Made by a program: the position numbers and the translations under genes. The notes below the pieces were generated by a model. The model did not search any database, was not told where the DNA came from, and was given only the letters and a program-made list of their open reading frames with translations. A stretch of 63,053 bases of DNA, filler included, from Platydemus manokwari (taxonomy: Eukaryota), in NCBI GenBank assembly GCA_037951405.1. It is 6 parts of 6 records of this genome, joined end to end, with 100 filler letters (N's around TTAATTAATTAA, not from the genome) between each part and the next. Parts side by side here need not be neighbours in the genome. Positions count along the whole stretch, not along the records: positions 43,516 to 53,790 come from JBBMOY011150438.1; 5 more parts are not named here. One strand, given 5' to 3'. This document shows positions 43,516-53,790 of the stretch, piece by piece (the first letter of the stretch is position 1; each line of letters starts with the position of its first letter).

Positions 43516-46500
43516 GAATTAAGGTTTGAAATTGATAAAATTAATAACAAGTTGTGGGTTAATAGTTATATGTTAGATAAAAAATCTGGCTTAATAACAG
43601 AAAACAAACAAAATATTGATAAACTTGATTCTTATAAAACATATAAATAATTTATAAAACATATTCATTACTATTTTAAATAAAATTAATATTAACCTCA
43701 TTAGTTAACATGTTATTATGTAATAACACCATTTCAGTGAATAATTTTAATTCATCTAATTCTAATAATTTAACGAACCAAAAAGATTTAAATAAAACTC
43801 TAATTGGTCTCGAACCTATAACTAACACGCCTGTAGCTCAAAATACATTATACCAATTAATTCAATCCCAAATAGATCAATTTACCCAAACCCTCGATTT
43901 AAATGAAAATAACTTAAGTAATTTAACTCCTACCCCTTACCAAATTCCACCAATATCTCCTATAATTAATAATAATACTAAAATTAATAATACTCCTACC
44001 CTAACCCTAAACTACCTGGTATTTTCTGGCCTTTATGCAGTGCATTGAAATTCATATTTACCCTTAGATACTTACCTGGTGTTCAGCAACTATGACCAAC
44101 AAAGTGATTCAACACTGAGGGATGGATTACGTCCCAAATGGATTACGTAATGACGTACCGGCACATCTAACTTTTATGCAGGATCCCGAAAGTGCGTTCA
44201 AAAACCCAAAAAAGCAAAATCACTACTTAACTACTAAGAACCTCAACGAAGATAAAAAACCTATTCTGGAAAATACCCCAACATGTCCAGCCAACCTAAC
44301 TACTGGAAAAGCATTGGGACCTCACCTTCTCAATACTGGGAAAGTCAGAACAAGAAATCTAGTGCAACACAGACAAGCATATCAAGCAACCCGAGCGCAC
44401 AACCAGAACAGACTAAGGTAGACTCAAAAATACCAAAATTCAAAACACAAGACACAAGAAATGGACCTACCGTACTGTCCCCGCTTGATCTTCCGAAGAC
44501 AACCAATCCTACAAAATGTAAGGTAACCATATCAAAACAGGGGACAACTTCTCCACTTTCTCTGGCTTAATCAATTACATCAGCTCCCTCACATGCCTAT
44601 GTGACTCATGTCGTATTTCTTCTCTCCAGACCATATCTCCCCAAAAAAGAAAAAATGCTTCAGACCCACGAAGACATACAAGAAACATAGCAAAATCAAC
44701 CACATGAAGGATCAATTACTATGCAACTGCACCAAATGCCATATACCTCCAAAGCCTTCCGCAAACTCAACTGCCTCCAATCTAACGATCCCAAACTGAG
44801 ATGCACCGCTATTAAAAGCACATCAAGAAAACTGGAGCGAAACTAGCATTCAATAGTCTACAATATATCAAATGCGGCTGCAAAGAATGCACAAAAGCCT
44901 TCAACACCACCATATGACCAATACTAAACTTGGAAACCATCAAATCTTTACCAACAAGCGAATTACTGCAAAAATCTCCCAACCCGAAACCAATAACAAA
45001 ACAAGACTGTCAGATTAATTTCCAGCCAGCTGTAAAGGATACCGCACACCAACTCATGCATATTACAGCTCTTCTGACCTGCTCATGCGTGACATGCTAC
45101 ATTTCTGGACAATTAAAAATCCAGGAGCTATCAAGCAGATGGAAAAAATTCAATAAATATTTCCAGATTCAACCTGCTAGCAATAAAAAGAAACACACAG
45201 TCAGCGAAACACCCTCTGAACACAACGAAATTGTCCACCATGATGAAATCTCAAGCGATGAAACCCCACAAATAATCGAGGTGAAGACTGCGAAAAGGAA
45301 CATTGAACCAATGTCCGATCTAGTCCCAACTGAAATTGTTAAAGACATGGGTGACATCCTCCTAACACAATGGACTATTGGCTCACCAAACTCAGCATAT
45401 ACTCTTTCAGATTCAGAGGATAACTCTTCCCAGTCAGAAGAAGCCATTACCGCTCATCCAGTCACGATAGACCAACCTCAAGAACAAATCGTACTGACGC
45501 AATACTTATCGAAACTATACGGAGGAGTAAACCAAACCCCCGCCTATATGACCCTGACAGATGATAAGAATGGAAAATGCAACATGTGCACATAGATATA
45601 TCGCTTTCCATTTGCGAACACTACAATAGTTCCGAAGCACTTCAACCAATCACACAACATCGCAATCAAATCTGAATTTGCAATCCAATGCTACTGTGGA
45701 TACATCGGACCAGCTACAGGCTTCAAATACCATCTTGATAATCATGCCCAACAACCCAAGAGGCAAACTGACGACACAGATATCGATGCTCTACCGCTAT
45801 CTAACGAAGAAATACAATCACAATGACTAACCAGCTCTGCGATCGAGGTCTTCATTCACAACAAAATCACAGACCCCGCCACCAACATCTTCATAAAGCC
45901 TCAGCCAGCTATTGCCATCCTAAAGAAGGACTTCAAAACGTTCTACGAATCCTTTTCCTTCAAGAAGCTTGCAACTTGGCTAAATGCTTACTGGCTAATC
46001 CACTGGAACAACAACTACTGAAACCTCTACATCGCAGATCGCCTCAAAATGTCATCCTACTTCATTGACCCAGCCACTAAATTTCTATCAGCCGAACAAA
46101 GATGCCTATGGAACAAACTGGATAACCTTTTCCAGAACTTATGCGCTCTAAATGATGGACTTATCCTCAACCAGTCTATCTTACCAGACCTGCCACTCCA
46201 ACTCAATTCACACGACTGTGGCCTCTTCATTATTCAGCATGTCCTCGACCATGTGAACAACTCACCAATCTACTACACACCGGTTTTCCCACAACTGCGC
46301 AACGACATCAATAAAGTAATTTCGGATACCATTTTATTTAGAAAACTCGCCACACGGACCGACAAAAACTCTGGAACTTCGATGAACCCAATTTTAATAG
46401 ATGCAATTAAACTGAATGAAACTAACGCCGCGGACCTGACTCAAATACTCACCTCTGCTCGGACAGCTATTTCGTCAATGGACACATCTAGATTTGCACC

Positions 46501-47039
46501 AAAGAAAATGATCAAATCATCCGTCCTTCACTTAATGGACGAATCATCCTCCGATTACAAGCTCAGAACCCTAAGAAAACTCTACGAAATATTATGCCGT
46601 CAACCAACCCTACTGCGACTACGAATAGTGATGACATAATACAACACTATACCCAGACTAAACCGAAACCTTTATCAGCTAACTTCTGCCCACCTATGCC
46701 TAGATACGATGACAATTCAAATCTTAAAGAAATCTCAGTAGGAGAAATAGCAAACACATTCGAGAAACTAGCAAAATCCTCCCCTGGCAACGATGGGATC
46801 ACTTACAGCGATTAGAGACGAATGGACCCACAACACCTCTTTCTTCAATCACTTTTCAACAAAATACTTAAATAAAAAACCATCCCAAACCAGTGGAAAG
46901 AATTTAACACCAACTTGCTAATAAAACCGGGTAAACAAGACCTAGCTCATAATAATTTCCTGGAGGCCAATTGCGCTCACAGATACCTCATATCGTATCT
47001 TCACCACAATTCTCAACCTCAGATTATTGAAATGGATAG

Positions 47040-48299
47040 ATGCTGGAAGCCTATTATCAAAGAACCAAAAAGCCCTGTTTTGCCTCCGACGGGTGTGCGG
47101 AGAACAACGCATACCTCTTCTCTCTCCAAGAATATGCAACACAGCAGAGCAAAGACCTCAATCTATGCTGGATAGATCTCAAAGAAGCATTCCCAAGCCT
47201 TCCGCACGATATCAACAGGTTTACACTCAAATCGATTGGCTGCAACTCCCACTATATCGAAATGATACAGACCTTATACGAGGACAGCAGGACTACCTAT
47301 ACTTGTGGAATAATAAAGACTCCACCAATTCCAATCTACCGTGGTGTCAAACAAGGATGTTCATTGTCAATGACATTGTTCTGCCTAACAATTGACTTCA
47401 TCCTACGCTCATCGGCAAATATACCGGAACCGCTGAAGACCCACAACACCCAACTCTCAACATTGGCCTACGCTGATGACATAGTGATCCTAGCAAATTC
47501 CGGTGAAAACCTTGAACTCAGACTAAACCACATCATAAATTCTACTAATGATATTCAGTTAACCATAAATGCCAGCAAATGTGGATACTTCACCAAAAAC
47601 CCAAGGAATCAGATTAATCTCACCATTAACGAAGAACCAGTACCAATCATCGATGCGGAAAATCTATACAGATACCTTGGCGTCCCTTTTGGTCTCCCAA
47701 AAAGATCCCCTGTTGATAATATCTTACAAACAATTATATCTGACTTTGAAGCCATTGCCGAATCAAGACTGCATCCATCGCAGAAGTTGGCAGCATACAA
47801 TATCTTCCTGCACTGGCGACTTCCCTTCCACTTCCGAATTCAACAAGTCGAAACGATAAAATTGGACTCCAGAACACTAATCAATGACGACAATAACAAC
47901 CTCGTACAATCCTTTGACAAAAAAATACGACAAATTAGTCGCAGAAATATGAAGATGGACGGATCCAACTCTAGCAATAACTTCTTCATGTATGCCCCAG
48001 CGAAACTCGGCGGTATTGGTCTAACCACCTCACTCATGAAATACTGTATCCAAAGTGTGGTCGGGGCCTTCCGGTACTTAACTAGCTCAGACCAACAATT
48101 CAGAGACTTCATAAAGGACCACATCATTTATGTTGTGAAAAACAGAACTACGGAATCTTGCGACCTCAATACTGCCTTACTATGGATCTCGGACAAGTTG
48201 ACCACCAATAAATCCAGCTCTTCATCAACGTGGTGGACCAAAACCAGATTTGCGATAAGGAAACTAAGAAAAATAGCCATCGACATCCAGTTCTTCTAA
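47040..48299 (+). pseudogene. Reverse transcriptase core of copy A (largest open fragment, 419 aa)
   Basis: Non-LTR RT motifs DLKEAF, GVKQG, YADD; flanked by stops and frameshifts. Confidence 0.92.
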
Positions 48300-48523
48300 C
48301 ATAACACCGAAGTCCTACTGAAAATTTCAATCGATTAGGATAAAACCTACCACTTCAACTTTGACAACAAAAGAAAACTATCAGATATCCTCCATGACTC
48401 AGTCTTCATGTACCACTTCAATGAATGGAAGACTATGAAAAAACAAGGAAGACTCGCTCATTGTTTCTCTGCCTCGTACATATCGCAGAAACCACTAAAA
48501 AACTGCAACCTCTCGCCTGAGGT

Positions 48524-49192
48524 ATGGATATTTTTCCAACAAGCAAGAAACAATCTCCTTTTGCTCCGTACTTTATCAAAAAGGAAAAATCGACGCTCTG
48601 CTTAAGATGCCTTACTGAAAGGGAAACAGATGCCCATATCTTTATACACTGTCCCGCAGTACTTGGACTTGCATCGAAAAGACATGCGGTGATTCTCGAC
48701 CATCTTGAACACTACCTCAGATCGTTAGGTTTCGACACGGACATCGATATGACACCGCCTGAGATGAACACGAAACTCAGGCCTGACCTAATCACCAGGA
48801 ACAAGGTAAAACGCCGTGCCTACATAGTGGATCTAAAAATCCCTTTTGATATGGCTGAAAACTTCGAAAAACACAGACTTCTAGACTTCGAAAAACACAA
48901 GGCAATCGCTGCCGAAATCAGGACCAAAACAAGATTCGAAACCAGCTTAGATGTGCTCTGCTTAGGAGTACTTGGATCTTGGGACCCAATGAACAATGGT
49001 GTACTCTCCAACATTGGACTCGACAAAGCCCAAATCACTTTCATCGCAGGGTTTCTGATAAGCTCTTCACTGAAAGATGCCTTCGCCACCTACAAGGCCC
49101 ACACGGATATGCGAAACCTCAAGCCCCCGTCTTGGGTTAGGGCATTCAAACAACTAGCCGGACCTACCAATGATTCGCAGCAGAATCGATAA
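48524..49192 (+). pseudogene. CCHC knuckle plus restriction-like endonuclease domain of copy A
   Basis: C-x2-C-x8-H-x4-C, RH, PD...D-L-K, GVLGSW. Confidence 0.9.
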
Positions 49193-49343
49193 GAATTATA
49201 AGAATCCAAACTGGAAACTTGTCAAGCAGATATTCCGAGCACTACGGAAATGAACATATGCAGTACAAAAGATGTGAGGACTTGTGCCACCGCATCGATC
49301 AGAATATTATGTTTATATTAAATAAATTTTAGTTTAAAAAAAA

Positions 49344-52300
49344 TACTGTTTTATAATAACGATGCTTATTTTCAGGATTATCTGGCCTATGTACAGTGGA
49401 GGGAGAATGAACGATGATACTCAAGCCAATTCTACTCAAATACAATGCTCCCATCAGTCGGCAGTTCTTTCCCATTCCCACCCAGGCCAGGTGTCCAAAA
49501 TGAAATAAATGGAACTTTAAATTCTCCAATAGAAAATTTAAAAGAAAGATAAATTATAAATCTCGTTATTCTAGATTTAGACGTCCTACTACGAAGAGTT
49601 TTAACTCGAGCAGAAAAACTTAGAACGATTATAAATCATTACATAATCATTGTAATAATAAATCATCCTATAATAATTCATTTAGGAACCACGCTCCCAC
49701 TGGCCATGATGATTTTCAAACTAGAATCCCTGCTCAGGATCATATCAATCGTAACTTTGACTCTTATATCCATAATCTTTCTAATTCTAGACCTCTGGCA
49801 CAAAGACTTTGACTTCGAAAATATCCAATTTGACCACAGAAGATTCCCAATTATCCCTCAGAGCTCACTACACACTGAGAATCGATCAAATCAAGCACCA
49901 ATATCATACTCTACTGCTTTACAATCACAACAAAACACCCAGCATAATCAATTACGTAATAACAATATTGTAAATAATTCACCCACTTTTAGATCTAACC
50001 AACAATTCCCGATCCCACAACCCCTACCTCCTGCCCCTATACCATCTAACATCTAATGTTAACAATGGAAATCTTCAGCAACAATCAGGAGATAACTTCA
50101 TCATCCCTAACAAGTGGACCCCACAACAGTCCCATTTCAACCCAAAAACAAACTTCCAAAGCCAAAATAGATTTGAAGCTCTCCAAAACTTCAATGGTGA
50201 TATACCACAATCAAATCATAACCAAAAACCGATTCATAAGCCTTTTAATTACCATAATTCTAATAAAAAATCTAATTTTAATAAATCTAGATCCACACAG
50301 ACTACTGCCACACCCCCGAAACTGACGAAGGATAGTCCCCCTACCGCATCACAGAGCATCCAGCTTAGGGGTCGACAGGCGAATGGCTGTGATCGTGAAA
50401 ACGAGCAGTCGAGAGATTCTATCAACTTTTTCCTAAAACTTGTTTTATGTATTTTTCATTTTATTAATATAAACAACTCAAATGACCTTATAAGCCTATT
50501 AATTTTTAATAAAATTAACATAAATAATTTAAAAAAAACTATCAACAATAAATTTCATAATAATAGGACCAACAATATCGTTTTAAATATCACCTTAAGT
50601 ATTTTTAATAAAATTAATATTAACTCCATTAATAAATTTAATATGTTATTACGCAATAACAAAATTTCCGTAAATAACTATAATTTAACAAATCAAAATG
50701 ATTTAAATATTGCCTTACTCGATTTAGAACCCACTACTACTCCCATAGATAAAATTGACCAACTTATTCAATCGCAAATCGACCAACTTACCCAAGCAGT
50801 GGACCTGGATAATAATTTAAATAATAATTTAAATAATCCTACTCCTACCCCCTACCAAATAAGACCGATATCCCCCAGAAGTAATGAAACAATAATAAAT
50901 AATAATAAAATTAAAACCGACAACTCCACCAGTGTTGATCCCGATGATAAAATTATTTCCTCCGACTCAGAAATTGAATATATAGGACACACGCCCAATA
51001 GCTCTTTTAGTACATCACTTAATTTATATGGCGGGGCTCCAAATAATACTGCGCATATGATTATGCTTGACGATAGGACATCCAGTTGTACAAACTGTGA
51101 TAAAACTTATGTCTTCCCATTCACGTATAATAAGAATATCATAAAACATTATAATGATAAACATAATAAGGAGATATCCACTGAATTTAATATATTATGT
51201 CATTGTGATTTTATAAGTAATAGCATAGGTTTTAAGTTCCACAATGACGAACATAAGAATGCAATTATAGAAACGGATATCGACTCTACTTTTGAGGAAA
51301 TTCAAATATCACCATATGATTTATTGGCCCAATGACTGTCTAGTTCAGTCATTGAGGCATTTATTAAGTTTAAGAACCCTAACCCTATTGAATTTATATT
51401 TATAGAACCCCACTCTTCCAGTGCCATTTTAAACCGTGACTATGTAAATTTCTATATGACTTTCCCATTCCCCAACTTAGCATCATGGAAAGTAGCATTT
51501 TGGCTCATCCATTGGAATAACAGGCACTGGAACTTATATATAGTTGACCTCAATAATAATTACTCATATTATATAGATCCCGCTACCTTTTATTTAACTG
51601 AGGCCCAAAAACATTTATGGACTACTTTAGATAATTTAATTCAAAATTTAACAAAAATTAATTTGAATATTTTATTAACTCAAAATATTATCCCAAATCT
51701 CCCGAAACAAATCAACGACACAGACTGTGGACTATTCGTCATACAACATACACTAGATTATTTTACCCAGTCTGACATATGTCATACACCAAACGCCGAT
51801 TTTAAAATCCAATAAATTAAATAATAATATTACACAATCAACTAATAATCCCCACCCATTAATATTGGAAGCGTTAAAATTATTAGGAAATGACTCCCCC
51901 GACCTCACGCATATACTCACATTAGCCCGCAATGCATTAATAGCAATAGACCCTACACGATTCACAAATAAACAAATTATTAAGCCCTCAGTTCTACATC
52001 TTAAGTCCCCACAATCATCTGACTTTCGGCTAAGGCAACAATTCACACAACAACCCAAAAAAACAATTTATAATTTATTAACGTCATCAAATCCTCTCTC
52101 ACTACCAACACTAGATAACATAATTGACCATTTTACTATACCACCACCGCCACCATTACCACCGAGTTTCAACCCTGACTTACCTATAGGCAGAGATAAT
52201 TCCAATTTAAAACCGATTACCTTAGATGAACTAACAGCTTGCCTTAAAAAACTATCAAACTCAGCCCAGGTTCTGATGTCATAAGATTTAGCAACTGGAA

Positions 52301-52514
52301 TAAATTAGATCCCAACCTTAATTATCTACTAAATCTTTTTAATAAAATTTTAGCTAGCAAAACTATTCCAGATCAGTGGAAAAGTTGTAAAACTATTTTA
52401 TTATTAAAACCGGGCAAAGATAATTATATTCTATCACATATCGTAAACTCTTGGAAACCAATTGCTCTGACTGACACATCATATAGGATTTTCGCAACCA
52501 TCATTAACAATAAT
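49344..52514 (+). mobile_element. NeSL/R5-type retrotransposon, copy B: putative 5' region and decayed ORF1-like segment, ORF2 N-terminus, Zn fingers and Ulp1 protease; 3'-truncated at the start of RT
   Basis: ORF 50643 is homologous to ORF 43710 (MLLxNNxISVNN...QLIQSQIDQxTQ...TPTPYQIxPISP). Contains CTNC...KHYNDKH; protease WLIHWNNRHWNLY...YIDP...KQINDTDCGLFV with H/D/Q/C intact; LSNSAPG..., IPDQWK, NSWKPIALTDTSYRIF; then an abrupt end. The 5' boundary is inferred. Confidence 0.85.
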
Positions 52515-53570
52515 GTGGTAAATATGATGGGTGAGATTCCAAATATATATCATGTAGAAGAATTAGATGAAAATTATATATTAAAAAGTATAGACAAAGA
52601 TCAAAAAGTTGTATATACTAAAGATGTTCTAAAGCTTAGTAATATAAATTTAAATAGTCTACATCTTTATTTATGTGAAGTACTATTTGAACCTTTTATA
52701 AATAATGATATACCTGATGAAACATGCAAAAAGATACGAAAATATCATTTTGATGCAAAGTTCTTTTTAGAACTGGAGGCGATATTGTATCTTATAATTT
52801 TTATGTGAAAGATAAAGTAATGATCAACATAAATATATATTTGGTTTAGCACATAAACCTAAATTATTATTTATTTCAACCACCAATTGTGGTTTTTTAA
52901 ATGATTTGCTTTATGATTTTTATCTATATAATGAATAAATATTTCCTAATTTTATTTAAGCTATATCTAAAGAGATACTTAAATTAGAAAAATATTTGGT
53001 TGATTATAATAACCATATTAACATATATATAAATAAATAGTTTTTTTAGTTTTCTTTTTCATAAATATTGAAAATATCTGCAAGAACTAAATCATTATGC
53101 TTATCAAAAGTGATATATTTATATTTTGTATTCCATTGTTTATTTGTAATAAAAGTAAAGTCTTCTTTTTCTAAAGTATTACTGAAATAATCTGAATATA
53201 TTAAATCTTTATCCCTTTTATTTAATTTAAACAAAATAACGAAATTGAAATTATTTCTAATTGTTTTCTATGGCAAATCAATTCAACTTTGTGAACCATA
53301 AATACTATTGCAATTATTATGTCTTCCTCTTGTATAATAAGCATACATAATTTTCTGGTTCTTCTCTGTCACACAATCATCAAAAGTTATTAAATTCTTT
53401 TTTGTTTTATTTAAATCTGAAGGATTCATAATTTTACCACATTCAGAGTTATTACATTTAGAGTTATTAGAGTTATAGAGTTATTACATTTTTCAAGAAA
53501 TCTTTCTGTACAAAGTTCAGAGATTTCTTTTATTGTTAAATTTTTATCAAAGTTGTCTTGGTCAGTAGTA
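52515..53570. mobile_element. Polinton/Maverick (virus-like DNA transposon) fragment
   Basis: Abrupt switch to very AT-rich, virus-like coding sequence: an unknown + strand ORF (52515-~53040, frameshifted) convergent with a packaging ATPase on the minus strand. Confidence 0.7.
53046..53450 (-). pseudogene. A32/FtsK-HerA-like DNA packaging ATPase of Polinton type (C-terminal half, frameshifted)
   Basis: IMNPSDLNKTKKNLITFDDCVTEKNQKIMYAYYTRGRHNNCNSIYGSQS (Walker B FDD, arginine-finger RGRH, SQ), then FDLP*KTIRNNFNFVILFKLNKRDKDLIYSD. Confidence 0.8.
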
Positions 53571-53790
53571 TGTTACACCAGTGTTTGACGCCGGGGGGCT
53601 CAAAAATGAATCACATATGATACATGCTTTTACAATTGGCAAACTACTACACTATTTTACTAGGATACTATTAATGGATCTTAGTTTTGTAATTTGCAAA
53701 TTTCATAAATATAAAAAACTAAAAAACTAAAAAAACTAAAAATCTGCGTAATTTAAATATTTTTAAGTGATATAATTTTAAATTCCTATT

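What the first reader, a model, noticed from the sequence alone, without database searches (positions are those of the whole stretch)
45515..51035. Conserved L-x-G-G di-glycine motifs in Ulp1-bearing retrotransposons: a candidate self-processing polyprotein
Seen: both diverged elements have LYGG (copy A 45515-45526, SKLYGG|VNQTPAYMTL; copy B 51024-51035, LNLYGG|APNNTAHMIM). The motif sits exactly where a poorly conserved acidic/low-complexity linker meets the zinc-finger/protease block, and uses different codons in each copy (CTA TAC GGA GGA vs TTA TAT GGC GGG). Known: clan CE cysteine proteases (Ulp1/SENP, adenovirus protease) cut after Gly-Gly, and the adenovirus consensus is (M/L/I)xGG|x. 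Inference: the element's Ulp1-like domain may cleave its own ORF2 at LxGG, releasing the N-terminal leader from the ZnF-protease-RT-RLE enzyme. That would give a function to this poorly understood domain and imply virus-like polyprotein maturation in a non-LTR retrotransposon. I am not aware of this being described, but could not check the literature.
Basis: partly seen in the sequence, partly recalled or inferred. Interest (0 to 1): 0.75.

Follow-up and report, generated by a model that had tools for sequence, protein, structure and literature searches.

The report
Conserved Gly-Gly motif in protease-bearing retrotransposons
Two decayed copies of an unusual jumping gene that carries a SUMO-protease-like domain share a Tyr-Gly-Gly motif where their variable front part meets the conserved enzyme; a third distant relative has it too, so it is a credible but unproven self-cleavage site.

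Summary
LYGG is at 45515-45526 (CTA TAC GGA GGA) and 51024-51035 (TTA TAT GGC GGG), in two decayed R2-type non-LTR retrotransposons. Their order is a variable Cys-rich leader, [YF]GG, two C2H2 fingers, a Ulp1/C48 protease, RT and CCHC-RLE.

The only outside relative found among 1.8 billion representative proteins (P0001) reads RFGG|APN in the same aligned column. So aromatic-Gly-Gly is invariant in three lineages that share about 26% identity there. The P4 Leu is not conserved. It is the only GG in B and in P0001, both Gly-poor, and alignable sequence begins there. Contigs of other A-type copies keep Gly-Gly through a synonymous change.

No tool could show cleavage. The complex prediction gave no answer, the AlphaFold models were useless, and no further relatives were reachable. 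I rate self-cleavage as the best reading at about 0.45. The main rival is a structural turn, with the protease acting on host SUMO.

One new, unexplained feature: A and B both carry an in-frame TGA at the column of Ulp1 Trp448, one wall of the Gly-Gly tunnel. P0001's reading frame ends at exactly that column. This points to stop-codon readthrough, to UGA read as Trp, or to parallel decay.

The parts
43646..43995 (+). Fragment C: a 5'-truncated, B-type leader fragment (MLLCNNTISVNN...). It ends before the LYGG column and so does not bear on the motif.
   Evidence: 74-90% nucleotide identity to B 50600-50907; ORF 43710-44048 parallels B 50643 onward.
44068..44204 (+). Degenerate U1 snRNA-like stretch at the 5' edge of element A. 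It may be the insertion target or co-transcribed flank.
   Evidence: Rfam U1 model matched over positions 1-166, but only 8.8 bits, E 5.5. The first 12 nt are exactly ATACTTACCTGG. A weak lead only.
44205..49478 (+). Element A (GC about 0.41): a decayed, probably 5'-truncated RLE-type non-LTR retrotransposon.
   Evidence: ORF pieces and frames; Pfam RVT_1; R2 matches. Contig depth is highest at 49081-49478 and collapses after 49478, which marks the 3' end.
44594..45514 (+). A leader: four CxCxxC modules (44594, 44722, 44873, 45080), then an acidic, Ser-rich, unalignable stretch.
   Evidence: Regex and shuffles; tblastn to P0001 residues 603-875.
45515..45526 (+). LYGG of copy A (CTA TAC GGA GGA), followed by VNQTPAYMTLTDD.
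   Evidence: All three run-X1 contigs laid at this place read GGT for the first Gly codon (45523 A>T, synonymous), while the next two codons change amino acid (45528 Val>Ala, 45531 Asn>Ser).
45578..45745 (+). A: two C2H2-type fingers (C-x2-C-x17-H-x5-H, broken by TAG at 45593; and C-x-C-x11-H-x3-H).
45824..45826 (+). A: in-frame TGA (CAA TGA CTA) at the column of Ulp1 Trp448.
45791..46285 (+). A: Ulp1-like protease domain. It has a second TGA at 46019-46021 (Trp515 column) and Tyr in the catalytic His column (46016-46018). The Gln and Cys motif QLNSHDCG at 46199-46222 is intact.
   Evidence: Alignment to B and Ulp1.
47040..48296 (+). A: reverse transcriptase (YADD at 47469-47480).
   Evidence: Pfam RVT_1 E 2.5e-21; R2 protein 9nl2 E 1.7e-25.
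48521..49189 (+). A: CCHC finger (48599-48652) and restriction-like endonuclease (RPD 48779, VDLK 48827).
   Evidence: R2 C-terminal region 9nl2 E 3.3e-6; motifs.
49553..52510 (+). Element B (GC about 0.30): the 5' part of a second, diverged family. It is 3'-truncated inside the RT. Frame 2 from 49974 to 51812 is 613 codons whose only stop is TGA at 51333.
50361..50408 (+). B leader motif QLRGRQANGCDRENEQ, nearly identical in P0001 (QLRGRAANGCDRESEQ). It lies in a GC-rich island with a local depth peak in the contigs.
   Evidence: tblastn; depth 580 against about 60-77 in neighbouring bins; no Rfam match; fold z +0.68.
51024..51035 (+). LYGG of copy B (TTA TAT GGC GGG), followed by APNNTAHMIMLDD.
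   Evidence: it is the only GG in B.
51087..51254 (+). B: two C2H2-type fingers.
51333..51335 (+). B: in-frame TGA (CAA TGA CTG) at the Ulp1 Trp448 column. It lies in the 5' arm of a B-specific hairpin.
   Evidence: hairpin z -3.16, with no equivalent in A.
51300..51791 (+). B: Ulp1-like (Peptidase_C48) domain with the His (RHW, 51522), Asp (IVD) and Gln/Cys (QINDTDCG, 51708) columns intact.
   Evidence: Pfam PF02902 E 1.2e-11 against a cutoff of 20.7 bits; Ulp1 1euv E 0.0019 and SENP2 E 0.0021; ESM Atlas neighbours are all Ulp1 clusters.

Best explanation
The piece holds two pseudogene copies (A, B) and one fragment (C) of a previously uncatalogued group of R2-superfamily (restriction-like-endonuclease) non-LTR retrotransposons of the NeSL/Utopia type. 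Each encodes one long reading frame. Its order is a fast-evolving leader (with repeated CxCxxC-H modules in A and P0001), an invariant aromatic-Gly-Gly, two C2H2 fingers, a Ulp1/SENP-like C48 cysteine protease, RT, and CCHC plus RLE. This much is shown. Inferred: the [Y/F]GG followed by A/V is the site where the element's own protease cuts the primary product, in cis or in trans. That would free the variable leader and leave an R2-like enzyme whose DNA-binding fingers sit at its N-terminus. The parallel is ASFV pS273R and adenain, which cut their polyproteins after Gly-Gly.
For: Motif and codons. The conserved block starts exactly at the motif. A third lineage, P0001, was found without reference to the motif and has RFGG|APN in the same column. 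It is the sole GG in the Gly-poor B and P0001. In the contig rows shown, Gly-Gly is kept through a synonymous change while the flanking codons change. The C48 domain has an intact catalytic set in B. The RT and RLE are R2-like, and in R2-type proteins the DNA-binding fingers are N-terminal (domain layout of Utopia/NeSL in PMC4640811). [quoted passage not shown]
Against: Only three sequences exist, and two of them are pseudogenes. P4 is Arg in P0001, so the adenain-type consensus fails. Residues after the GG (APN..A.M.L.D) are as conserved as those before it, which would also fit a structural N-terminal extension of the finger domain. Characterised C48 enzymes bind a folded Ubl domain (textbook knowledge, not checked here), and none is apparent upstream. 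No second GG separates protease from RT. The complex prediction gave no answer and the AF2 models were unusable.
Confidence: 0.45

Rival explanations
1. The Gly-Gly is a structural turn or hinge at the start of the zinc-finger DNA-binding module and is never cut. The Ulp1-like domain acts on host SUMO (or another Ubl) conjugates, for example to blunt SUMO-dependent silencing, as is usually assumed for Ulp1 domains carried by other transposons.
For: The domain is C48 by Pfam and is nearest to Ulp1 and SENP2 by sequence. Conservation continues straight after the GG into AHMIM/AYMTL/FALLI, which the low-confidence AF2 model draws as a strand paired with the first finger. P4 is not conserved. Conserved Gly pairs are common at turns (general knowledge).
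Against: It does not explain why the only GG of two Gly-poor proteins sits exactly at the edge of the alignable region, in a protein that carries a Gly-Gly-specific protease. No SUMO-related evidence was obtained here.
Confidence: 0.33
2. The GG is a processing site, but for host ubiquitin-, SUMO- or NEDD8-specific proteases rather than for the element's own domain.
For: Host Ubl-specific proteases also cut after Gly-Gly (general knowledge). Nothing here distinguishes cis from host cleavage.
Against: Host enzymes of this kind need the Ubl fold upstream, and the upstream sequence is acidic, Ser-rich and unalignable. The co-occurrence with an element-borne protease would then be a coincidence.
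Confidence: 0.07
3. The shared LYGG is residual similarity with no function of its own (chance or neutral retention).
For: A and B are pseudogenes, and only three lineages are available.
Against: All four codons differ between A and B, yet the peptide is identical. A lineage with about 26% identity keeps FGG. The surrounding upstream sequence is unalignable.
Confidence: 0.05

Closest known systems
NeSL-1 (C. elegans) and Utopia-1_TSP (Trichinella spiralis): RLE non-LTR retrotransposons with an N-terminal Ulp1-like protease (PMC4640811, citing Malik & Eickbush 2000)
   Same: One long ORF with zinc fingers, a Ulp1-like cysteine protease upstream of the RT, and a C-terminal finger plus RLE. The nearest RT in the protein database within the length window searched is from a trichinellid nematode (Trichuris muris, 25% identity).
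   Different: Very distant in sequence. Only one relative of the finger region appeared in 1.8 billion representative proteins. It has a long leader with repeated CxCxxC modules and an in-frame TGA inside the protease domain. The flank is U1-like rather than SL1 or U2. No RT phylogeny was made, so clade membership is untested.
R2 retrotransposon proteins (solved structures 9nl2, 9dou, 8gh6)
   Same: RT (E 1.7e-25) and CCHC plus RLE (E 3.3e-6) are homologous, and the zinc fingers lie N-terminal to the RT.
   Different: Per PMC4640811, a protease is recorded only for NeSL families and Utopia-1_TSP among these elements. From general knowledge, R2 has no protease and no long leader.
ASFV pS273R and adenovirus protease (clan CE viral maturation proteases)
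   Same: [quoted passage not shown] This is the closest functional analogy for what is proposed.
   Different: By my recollection of MEROPS these are separate families (C63, C5), whereas the domain here scores as C48, nearest to Ulp1 and SENP. The adenain P4 Met/Ile/Leu preference is met in A and B but not in P0001.
Ulp1/SENP deSUMOylases
   Same: Pfam C48 membership, with the His-Asp-Gln-Cys columns conserved and the second Trp column present in B.
   Different: Cellular enzymes act on folded SUMO. Here the candidate substrate is a linear motif in the same polypeptide, and the first tunnel-Trp codon is TGA in both copies.
2A-like peptides at the N-terminus of APE-type non-LTR ORFs (PMC3708506), and retroviral or alphaviral stop-codon readthrough
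   Same: These are known ways for retroelements and viruses to separate, or to set the ratio of, N-terminal and enzymatic products.
   Different: No D(V/I)ExNPGP motif is present. I found no paper describing readthrough at a conserved stop in an RLE-type non-LTR element.

Membership tests
RLE-type (R2 superfamily) non-LTR retrotransposon | Reverse transcriptase of the non-LTR type | tested here: met
   Pfam RVT_1 E 2.5e-21; best PDB hits are R2 proteins, E 1.7e-25, ahead of LINE-1 ORF2p at 2.4e-8.
RLE-type (R2 superfamily) non-LTR retrotransposon | C-terminal CCHC finger followed by a restriction-like endonuclease | tested here: met
   A 48521-49189 aligns to the R2 C-terminus, E 3.3e-6; CLRC..H....C, RPD and VDLK motifs.
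RLE-type (R2 superfamily) non-LTR retrotransposon | N-terminal zinc-finger DNA-binding region | tested here: met
   Two C2H2-type patterns in A, B and P0001. This rests on pattern only; there is no Pfam hit.
NeSL/Utopia group | Ulp1-like cysteine protease upstream of the RT | tested here: met
   PF02902 E 1.2e-11 in B. The feature is described for NeSL and Utopia-1_TSP in PMC4640811.
NeSL/Utopia group | RT branches with the NeSL/Utopia clade | not tested
   No reference RT set was available. The only lead is the nearest database RT, from Trichuris muris at 25% identity.
NeSL/Utopia group | Site-specific insertion into SL1 (NeSL) or U2 snRNA (Utopia) genes | tested here: inconclusive
   No SL1 or U2 match. 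A weak U1-like stretch abuts A's 5' edge (8.8 bits, E 5.5). This is a single junction and the copies are nested and decayed.
Peptidase C48 (Ulp1/SENP) | Profile match above the curated threshold | tested here: met
   45.3 bits against a cutoff of 20.7.
Peptidase C48 (Ulp1/SENP) | Catalytic His, Asp, Cys and oxyanion Gln | tested here: met
   B has RHW, IVD and QINDTDCG aligned to Ulp1 SHW, IID and QQPNGYDCG. In A the His column is Tyr, which is decay.
Peptidase C48 (Ulp1/SENP) | Two Trp residues that clamp the substrate Gly-Gly (Ulp1 Trp448 and Trp515; residue numbers from memory) | tested here: inconclusive
   The Trp515 column is Trp in B and TGA in A. The Trp448 column is TGA in both A and B, and P0001's ORF ends there.
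Peptidase C48 (Ulp1/SENP) | Isopeptidase or processing activity on SUMO | not testable with these tools
   Needs an enzyme assay.
Self-processing polyprotein with a clan CE protease (ASFV or adenovirus type) | Gly-Gly-Xaa site at a domain boundary of the protease's own polyprotein | tested here: met
   [YF]GG followed by A/V at the leader/finger boundary in three lineages.
Self-processing polyprotein with a clan CE protease (ASFV or adenovirus type) | Aliphatic P4, as in the adenain consensus (M/I/L)XGG-X | tested here: not met
   Leu in A and B, but Arg in P0001.
Self-processing polyprotein with a clan CE protease (ASFV or adenovirus type) | Demonstrated protease-dependent cleavage | not testable with these tools
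   Complex prediction returned 'no answer', which is not evidence either way.
Programmed stop-codon readthrough | In-frame stop conserved across diverged members, with conserved coding sequence continuing downstream | tested here: inconclusive
   TGA at the same column in A and B, and P0001's ORF ends there. The protease, RT and RLE are conserved downstream. However, A and B are pseudogenes and the DNA for P0001 was not obtainable.
Programmed stop-codon readthrough | Stimulatory context or downstream RNA structure | tested here: inconclusive
   Both copies read CAA UGA CU(A/G). A following C is expected 47% (B) and 79% (A) of the time from Leu codon usage alone. The hairpin is found in B only, z -3.16, and not in A.

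The most novel reading that the evidence does not exclude
This family expresses itself like a small virus, in two steps. First, a conserved UGA replaces the codon of the first Gly-Gly-clamping Trp of the Ulp1-like domain. Most ribosomes therefore stop after leader-GG-fingers, and only rare readthrough makes a complete protease-RT-endonuclease. Readthrough of UGA is known, from published work recalled here rather than checked, to insert Trp among other residues. Second, that protease cuts at the invariant [YF]GG to release the multi-CxCxxC leader. The result would be a gag/pol-like ratio plus polyprotein maturation in a non-LTR retrotransposon. If instead the host reads UGA as Trp, the first step falls away but the second stands.
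Probability: 0.2. Interest if true: 0.8.

Novelty: new variant of a known kind. Interest (0 to 1): 0.55.

Why it matters
My literature searches found no stated function for the Ulp1-like domain of NeSL/Utopia-type retrotransposons. The original NeSL-1 paper could not be read. A conserved Gly-Gly at the boundary between a disposable leader and the enzyme gives a concrete, cheap test: mutate Cys or GG and look for the cut. If the test is positive, it would show protease-driven polyprotein maturation in a non-LTR retrotransposon. That trait is otherwise associated with LTR elements and viruses. The shared in-frame TGA at a Trp column of the protease, if it is ancestral, would add translational recoding to the picture.

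Tried and rejected
- Complex prediction with the B protease piece and a 35-aa LYGG peptide gave score 0.00 and 'no answer'. This is not evidence either way.
- AlphaFold2 of the B LYGG-finger piece (pLDDT 37.6) and of the B protease piece (pLDDT 39.9) was too poor to use. No fold search was run on these models.
- More relatives were sought in several ways:
  - phmmer against 1.8 billion representative proteins gave one hit, P0001.
  - Word-index searches with the B protease and with P0001 residues 820-977 gave nothing new.
  - The RT search gave only two distant RTs within the length window.
  - Two metagenome scans and two viral-contig scans found nothing.
  - Exact look-ups of ten window ORFs were not in the collection.
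  - The two ESM Atlas calls only confirmed the Ulp1 assignment and otherwise gave nothing.
- Malik & Eickbush 2000 (PMC1460889) is not held. I could not check whether self-processing was already proposed for NeSL-1.
- A ciliate-type code (TAA/TAG read as Gln) was considered and rejected. B's 613-codon frame has no TAA or TAG but has 39 CAA/CAG codons.
- A 2A peptide was rejected, because there is no NPGP motif.
- An HDV-like ribozyme or other RNA in the GC-rich island 50285-50430 was rejected: no Rfam match and fold z +0.68.
- A Ubl fold upstream of the GG was not supported by anything seen. It was judged by eye only.

Full report
**What is in the piece**

Places 43516-53790 hold no N. Composition splits the piece into AT-rich flanks (GC 0.21-0.24), a block at GC about 0.41 (44050-49500) and a block at GC about 0.30 (49550-52500).

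Six-frame reading, Pfam and PDB sequence searches show two retrotransposon copies on the + strand.

- **Element A (about 44205-49478).** It carries a Cys-rich leader, LYGG, two C2H2-type fingers and a Ulp1-like domain. Further on are an RT (RVT_1 E 2.5e-21; R2 protein 9nl2 E 1.7e-25) and a CCHC finger plus restriction-like endonuclease (R2 C-terminus E 3.3e-6).
- **Element B (about 49553-52510).** It has the same order as far as the start of the RT, where it is cut off. Its protease piece scores PF02902 Peptidase_C48 at E 1.2e-11. It also matches yeast Ulp1 (1euv, E 0.0019) and SENP2.
- **Fragment C (43646-43995).** This is a third, B-type leader fragment. It ends before the motif.

Both A and B are pseudogenes. 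A has stops at 45593 (TAG), 45824 (TGA) and 46019 (TGA) and several frameshifts, and Tyr stands in the catalytic His column. B has one stop (TGA 51333) and two frameshifts.

A is abundant in the one public run that holds the stretch. In total, 854 contigs match at 80% or better. Depth is highest at 49081-49478 and then collapses, as expected for the 3' end of a family of mostly 5'-truncated copies.

**The observation**

LYGG is at 45515-45526 (CTA TAC GGA GGA) and at 51024-51035 (TTA TAT GGC GGG). In a local A/B protein alignment, the sequence upstream is essentially unalignable. From LYGG onward the two copies align without large gaps through the fingers and the protease, which is about 50% identical.

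**Is it more than chance?**

A phmmer search used the B segment that holds the motif and the fingers. Against 1.8 billion representative proteins it returned one relative, P0001 (977 aa, from a 6.9-kb Logan contig; E 1.3e-6).

P0001 is about 26% identical to A and B over this region. In the same aligned column it reads ETRFGG|APNPQFALLIDQ...C..C. The three lineages compare as follows:

| Position | A | B | P0001 |
|---|---|---|---|
| P4 | Leu | Leu | Arg |
| P3 | Tyr | Tyr | Phe |
| P2-P1 | Gly-Gly | Gly-Gly | Gly-Gly |
| P1' | Val | Ala | Ala |

- Aromatic-Gly-Gly followed by a small residue is therefore invariant, but the P4 Leu is not.
- The proteins are Gly-poor. B has 13 Gly in 840 aa and a single GG (0.2 expected). 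P0001 has 22 Gly in 977 aa and a single GG (0.49 expected). In each case the single GG is this one.
- All three run-X1 contigs laid at the A site read GGT for the first Gly codon, which is synonymous. The two codons after the motif change amino acid: Val to Ala, which gives the GGA reading of B and P0001, and Asn to Ser. Only the best-supported rows of that table were shown.

Together this indicates purifying selection on Gly-Gly during the family's active life.

**What the upstream part is**

It is not only an acidic linker.

- P0001 has six CxCxxC-x(8-10)-H modules in its leader, plus one in the second finger. Shuffles give a mean of 0.07 such motifs.
- A has four such modules. B has none in the part present.
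- B and P0001 also share a near-identical QLRGR.ANGCDRE.EQ motif far upstream.

The part that a cut at GG would release is therefore a variable, probably zinc-binding protein of up to about 875 aa.

**Mechanism**

The case for self-cleavage rests on these points:

- The element carries a clan CE protease whose relatives all cut after Gly-Gly.
- The only GG of the protein sits at a domain boundary.
- Cutting there would leave the DNA-binding fingers at the N-terminus, as in R2-type enzymes.

The case against rests on these points:

- The domain is C48 by sequence, not C5 or C63.
- Characterised C48 enzymes bind a folded Ubl domain (textbook knowledge, not checked here), and nothing Ubl-like is apparent upstream.
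- Conservation is as strong after the GG as before it.
- There is no second GG between protease and RT.

Direct tests failed. The complex prediction gave no answer. Both AlphaFold models had pLDDT below 40.

I allowed for the fact that the motif was picked post hoc. On that basis I put self-cleavage at about 0.45, a structural turn with the protease acting on host SUMO at about 0.33, cleavage by host enzymes at about 0.07, and chance at about 0.05.

**An unexpected feature: a shared in-frame TGA**

The stop that interrupts the protease domain is TGA in both copies: A at 45824 (CAA TGA CTA) and B at 51333 (CAA TGA CTG).

- The alignment to Ulp1 places residues 4-12 of B's downstream piece (SVIEAFIKF) on Ulp1 TIIEFFMKY. 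This puts the stop at the column of the Trp in ...WLND.... From memory, that residue is Trp448, one wall of the Gly-Gly tunnel.
- The sequence just upstream of the stop is conserved among the three lineages: L-P-[LV]-S/I-Q-I-S...[DE][IL]. It resembles the I-T-x-x-D-[FI] start of the C48 domain. This resemblance was judged by eye and not scored.
- P0001's reading frame ends at exactly this column, in an alignment that has no gaps over its last 60 residues.
- In B this TGA is the only stop in 613 codons.
- A has a second TGA at the Trp515 column. It lies next to the His-to-Tyr change, so it looks like decay.
- All other Trp codons are TGG: 13 in A and 9 in B.

Chance coincidence of B's single stop with one of A's stops ranges from about 0.02 to about 0.3. 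The lower figure takes any of the 168 codons in B that are one step from a stop. The upper figure assumes that only Trp codons decay to stops. P0001 ending in the same column lowers the figure by perhaps tenfold more.

Three readings remain:

- Conserved UGA readthrough. UGA readthrough is known to insert Trp among other residues (published work recalled, not checked here).
- A host code in which UGA is read as Trp.
- Parallel decay.

The context argues for none of them in particular. A following C is expected from Leu codon usage alone, and the hairpin over the TGA is present only in B. A TAA/TAG=Gln code is excluded for the element. The piece contains no host gene that could settle the code.

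**Comparison with what is known**

PMC4640811 describes Utopia and NeSL as RLE elements with N-terminal fingers. It records a Ulp1-like protease only in nematode NeSL families and in Utopia-1_TSP. The present elements share that architecture but are very distant:

- The nearest RT in the length window searched is from Trichuris muris, at 25% identity.
- There is a single relative of the finger region in 1.8 billion representative proteins.

No paper among those searched proposes a Gly-Gly self-cleavage site or a conserved internal stop for such elements. The original NeSL-1 paper could not be read, so priority for the general idea of self-processing cannot be excluded.

**Verdict**

One detail, the L at P4, is not general. 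I file the elements as a new variant of the NeSL/Utopia kind. Stops were read through only as X inside scripts.

Noticed in passing
window 45824-45826, 51333-51335 (also 46019-46021): There is an in-frame TGA at the column of Ulp1 Trp448 in both A and B, and P0001's ORF ends at the same column. A also has TGA at the Trp515 column. All other Trp codons are TGG (13 in A, 9 in B). Possible readings are conserved readthrough, a UGA=Trp host code, or parallel decay.
   Followed up: partly
window 44068-44204: A U1 snRNA-like stretch abuts the 5' edge of element A. Its first 12 nt are exactly ATACTTACCTGG. The full Rfam U1 model is covered, but at only 8.8 bits (E 5.5). This may hint at snRNA-gene targeting, as Utopia targets U2. 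A second (C)TACCTGGT lies at about 44012-44022.
   Followed up: partly
window 44594-45100 (A); P0001 residues 85-700: The leader carries repeated CxCxxC-x(8-10)-H modules: six in the P0001 leader and four in A, against a shuffle mean of 0.07. They resemble the second finger (ILCFCGYC...H...H). They may be zinc-binding modules of a Gag-like N-terminal product.
   Followed up: partly
window 50361-50408 (GC-rich island about 50290-50420): QLRGRQANGCDRENEQ is nearly identical in P0001 (residues 126-141), within otherwise unalignable leaders. Contig depth peaks here (580 against about 60-77 in neighbouring bins). There is no Rfam match and no unusual fold. Its function is unknown.
   Followed up: partly
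window 51327-51358: A hairpin, CAAUGACUG/CAGUCAUUG, encloses B's TGA (z -3.16; 1 of 200 shuffles folds as well). It is absent from A, so it may be chance.
   Followed up: yes
window 50931-50963 (B), 45251-45286 (A); P0001 about 812-825: An acidic, Ser-flanked hydrophobic patch (SVDPDDKIISS; SSDETPQIIEV; SVISIDPDSVIL) lies 30-90 residues upstream of the GG. By eye it resembles a SUMO-interaction motif. Not tested.
   Followed up: no
window 43996-44013: Two CCCTAA units (ctaccctaaccctaaac) lie at the junction between fragment C and the U1-like stretch. They are too short to be called telomeric.
   Followed up: no
window 43516-43647 and 52520-53790: The very AT-rich flanks (GC 0.21-0.24) hold only short ORFs. 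A 44-codon ORF end (…DKLDSYKTYK, TAA) lies on the left. B's RT breaks off near 52510 into unrelated AT-rich sequence. C and B both keep their 5' parts but lack their 3' parts, which is unusual for non-LTR copies. This suggests nested insertions, deletions or assembly joins.
   Followed up: no
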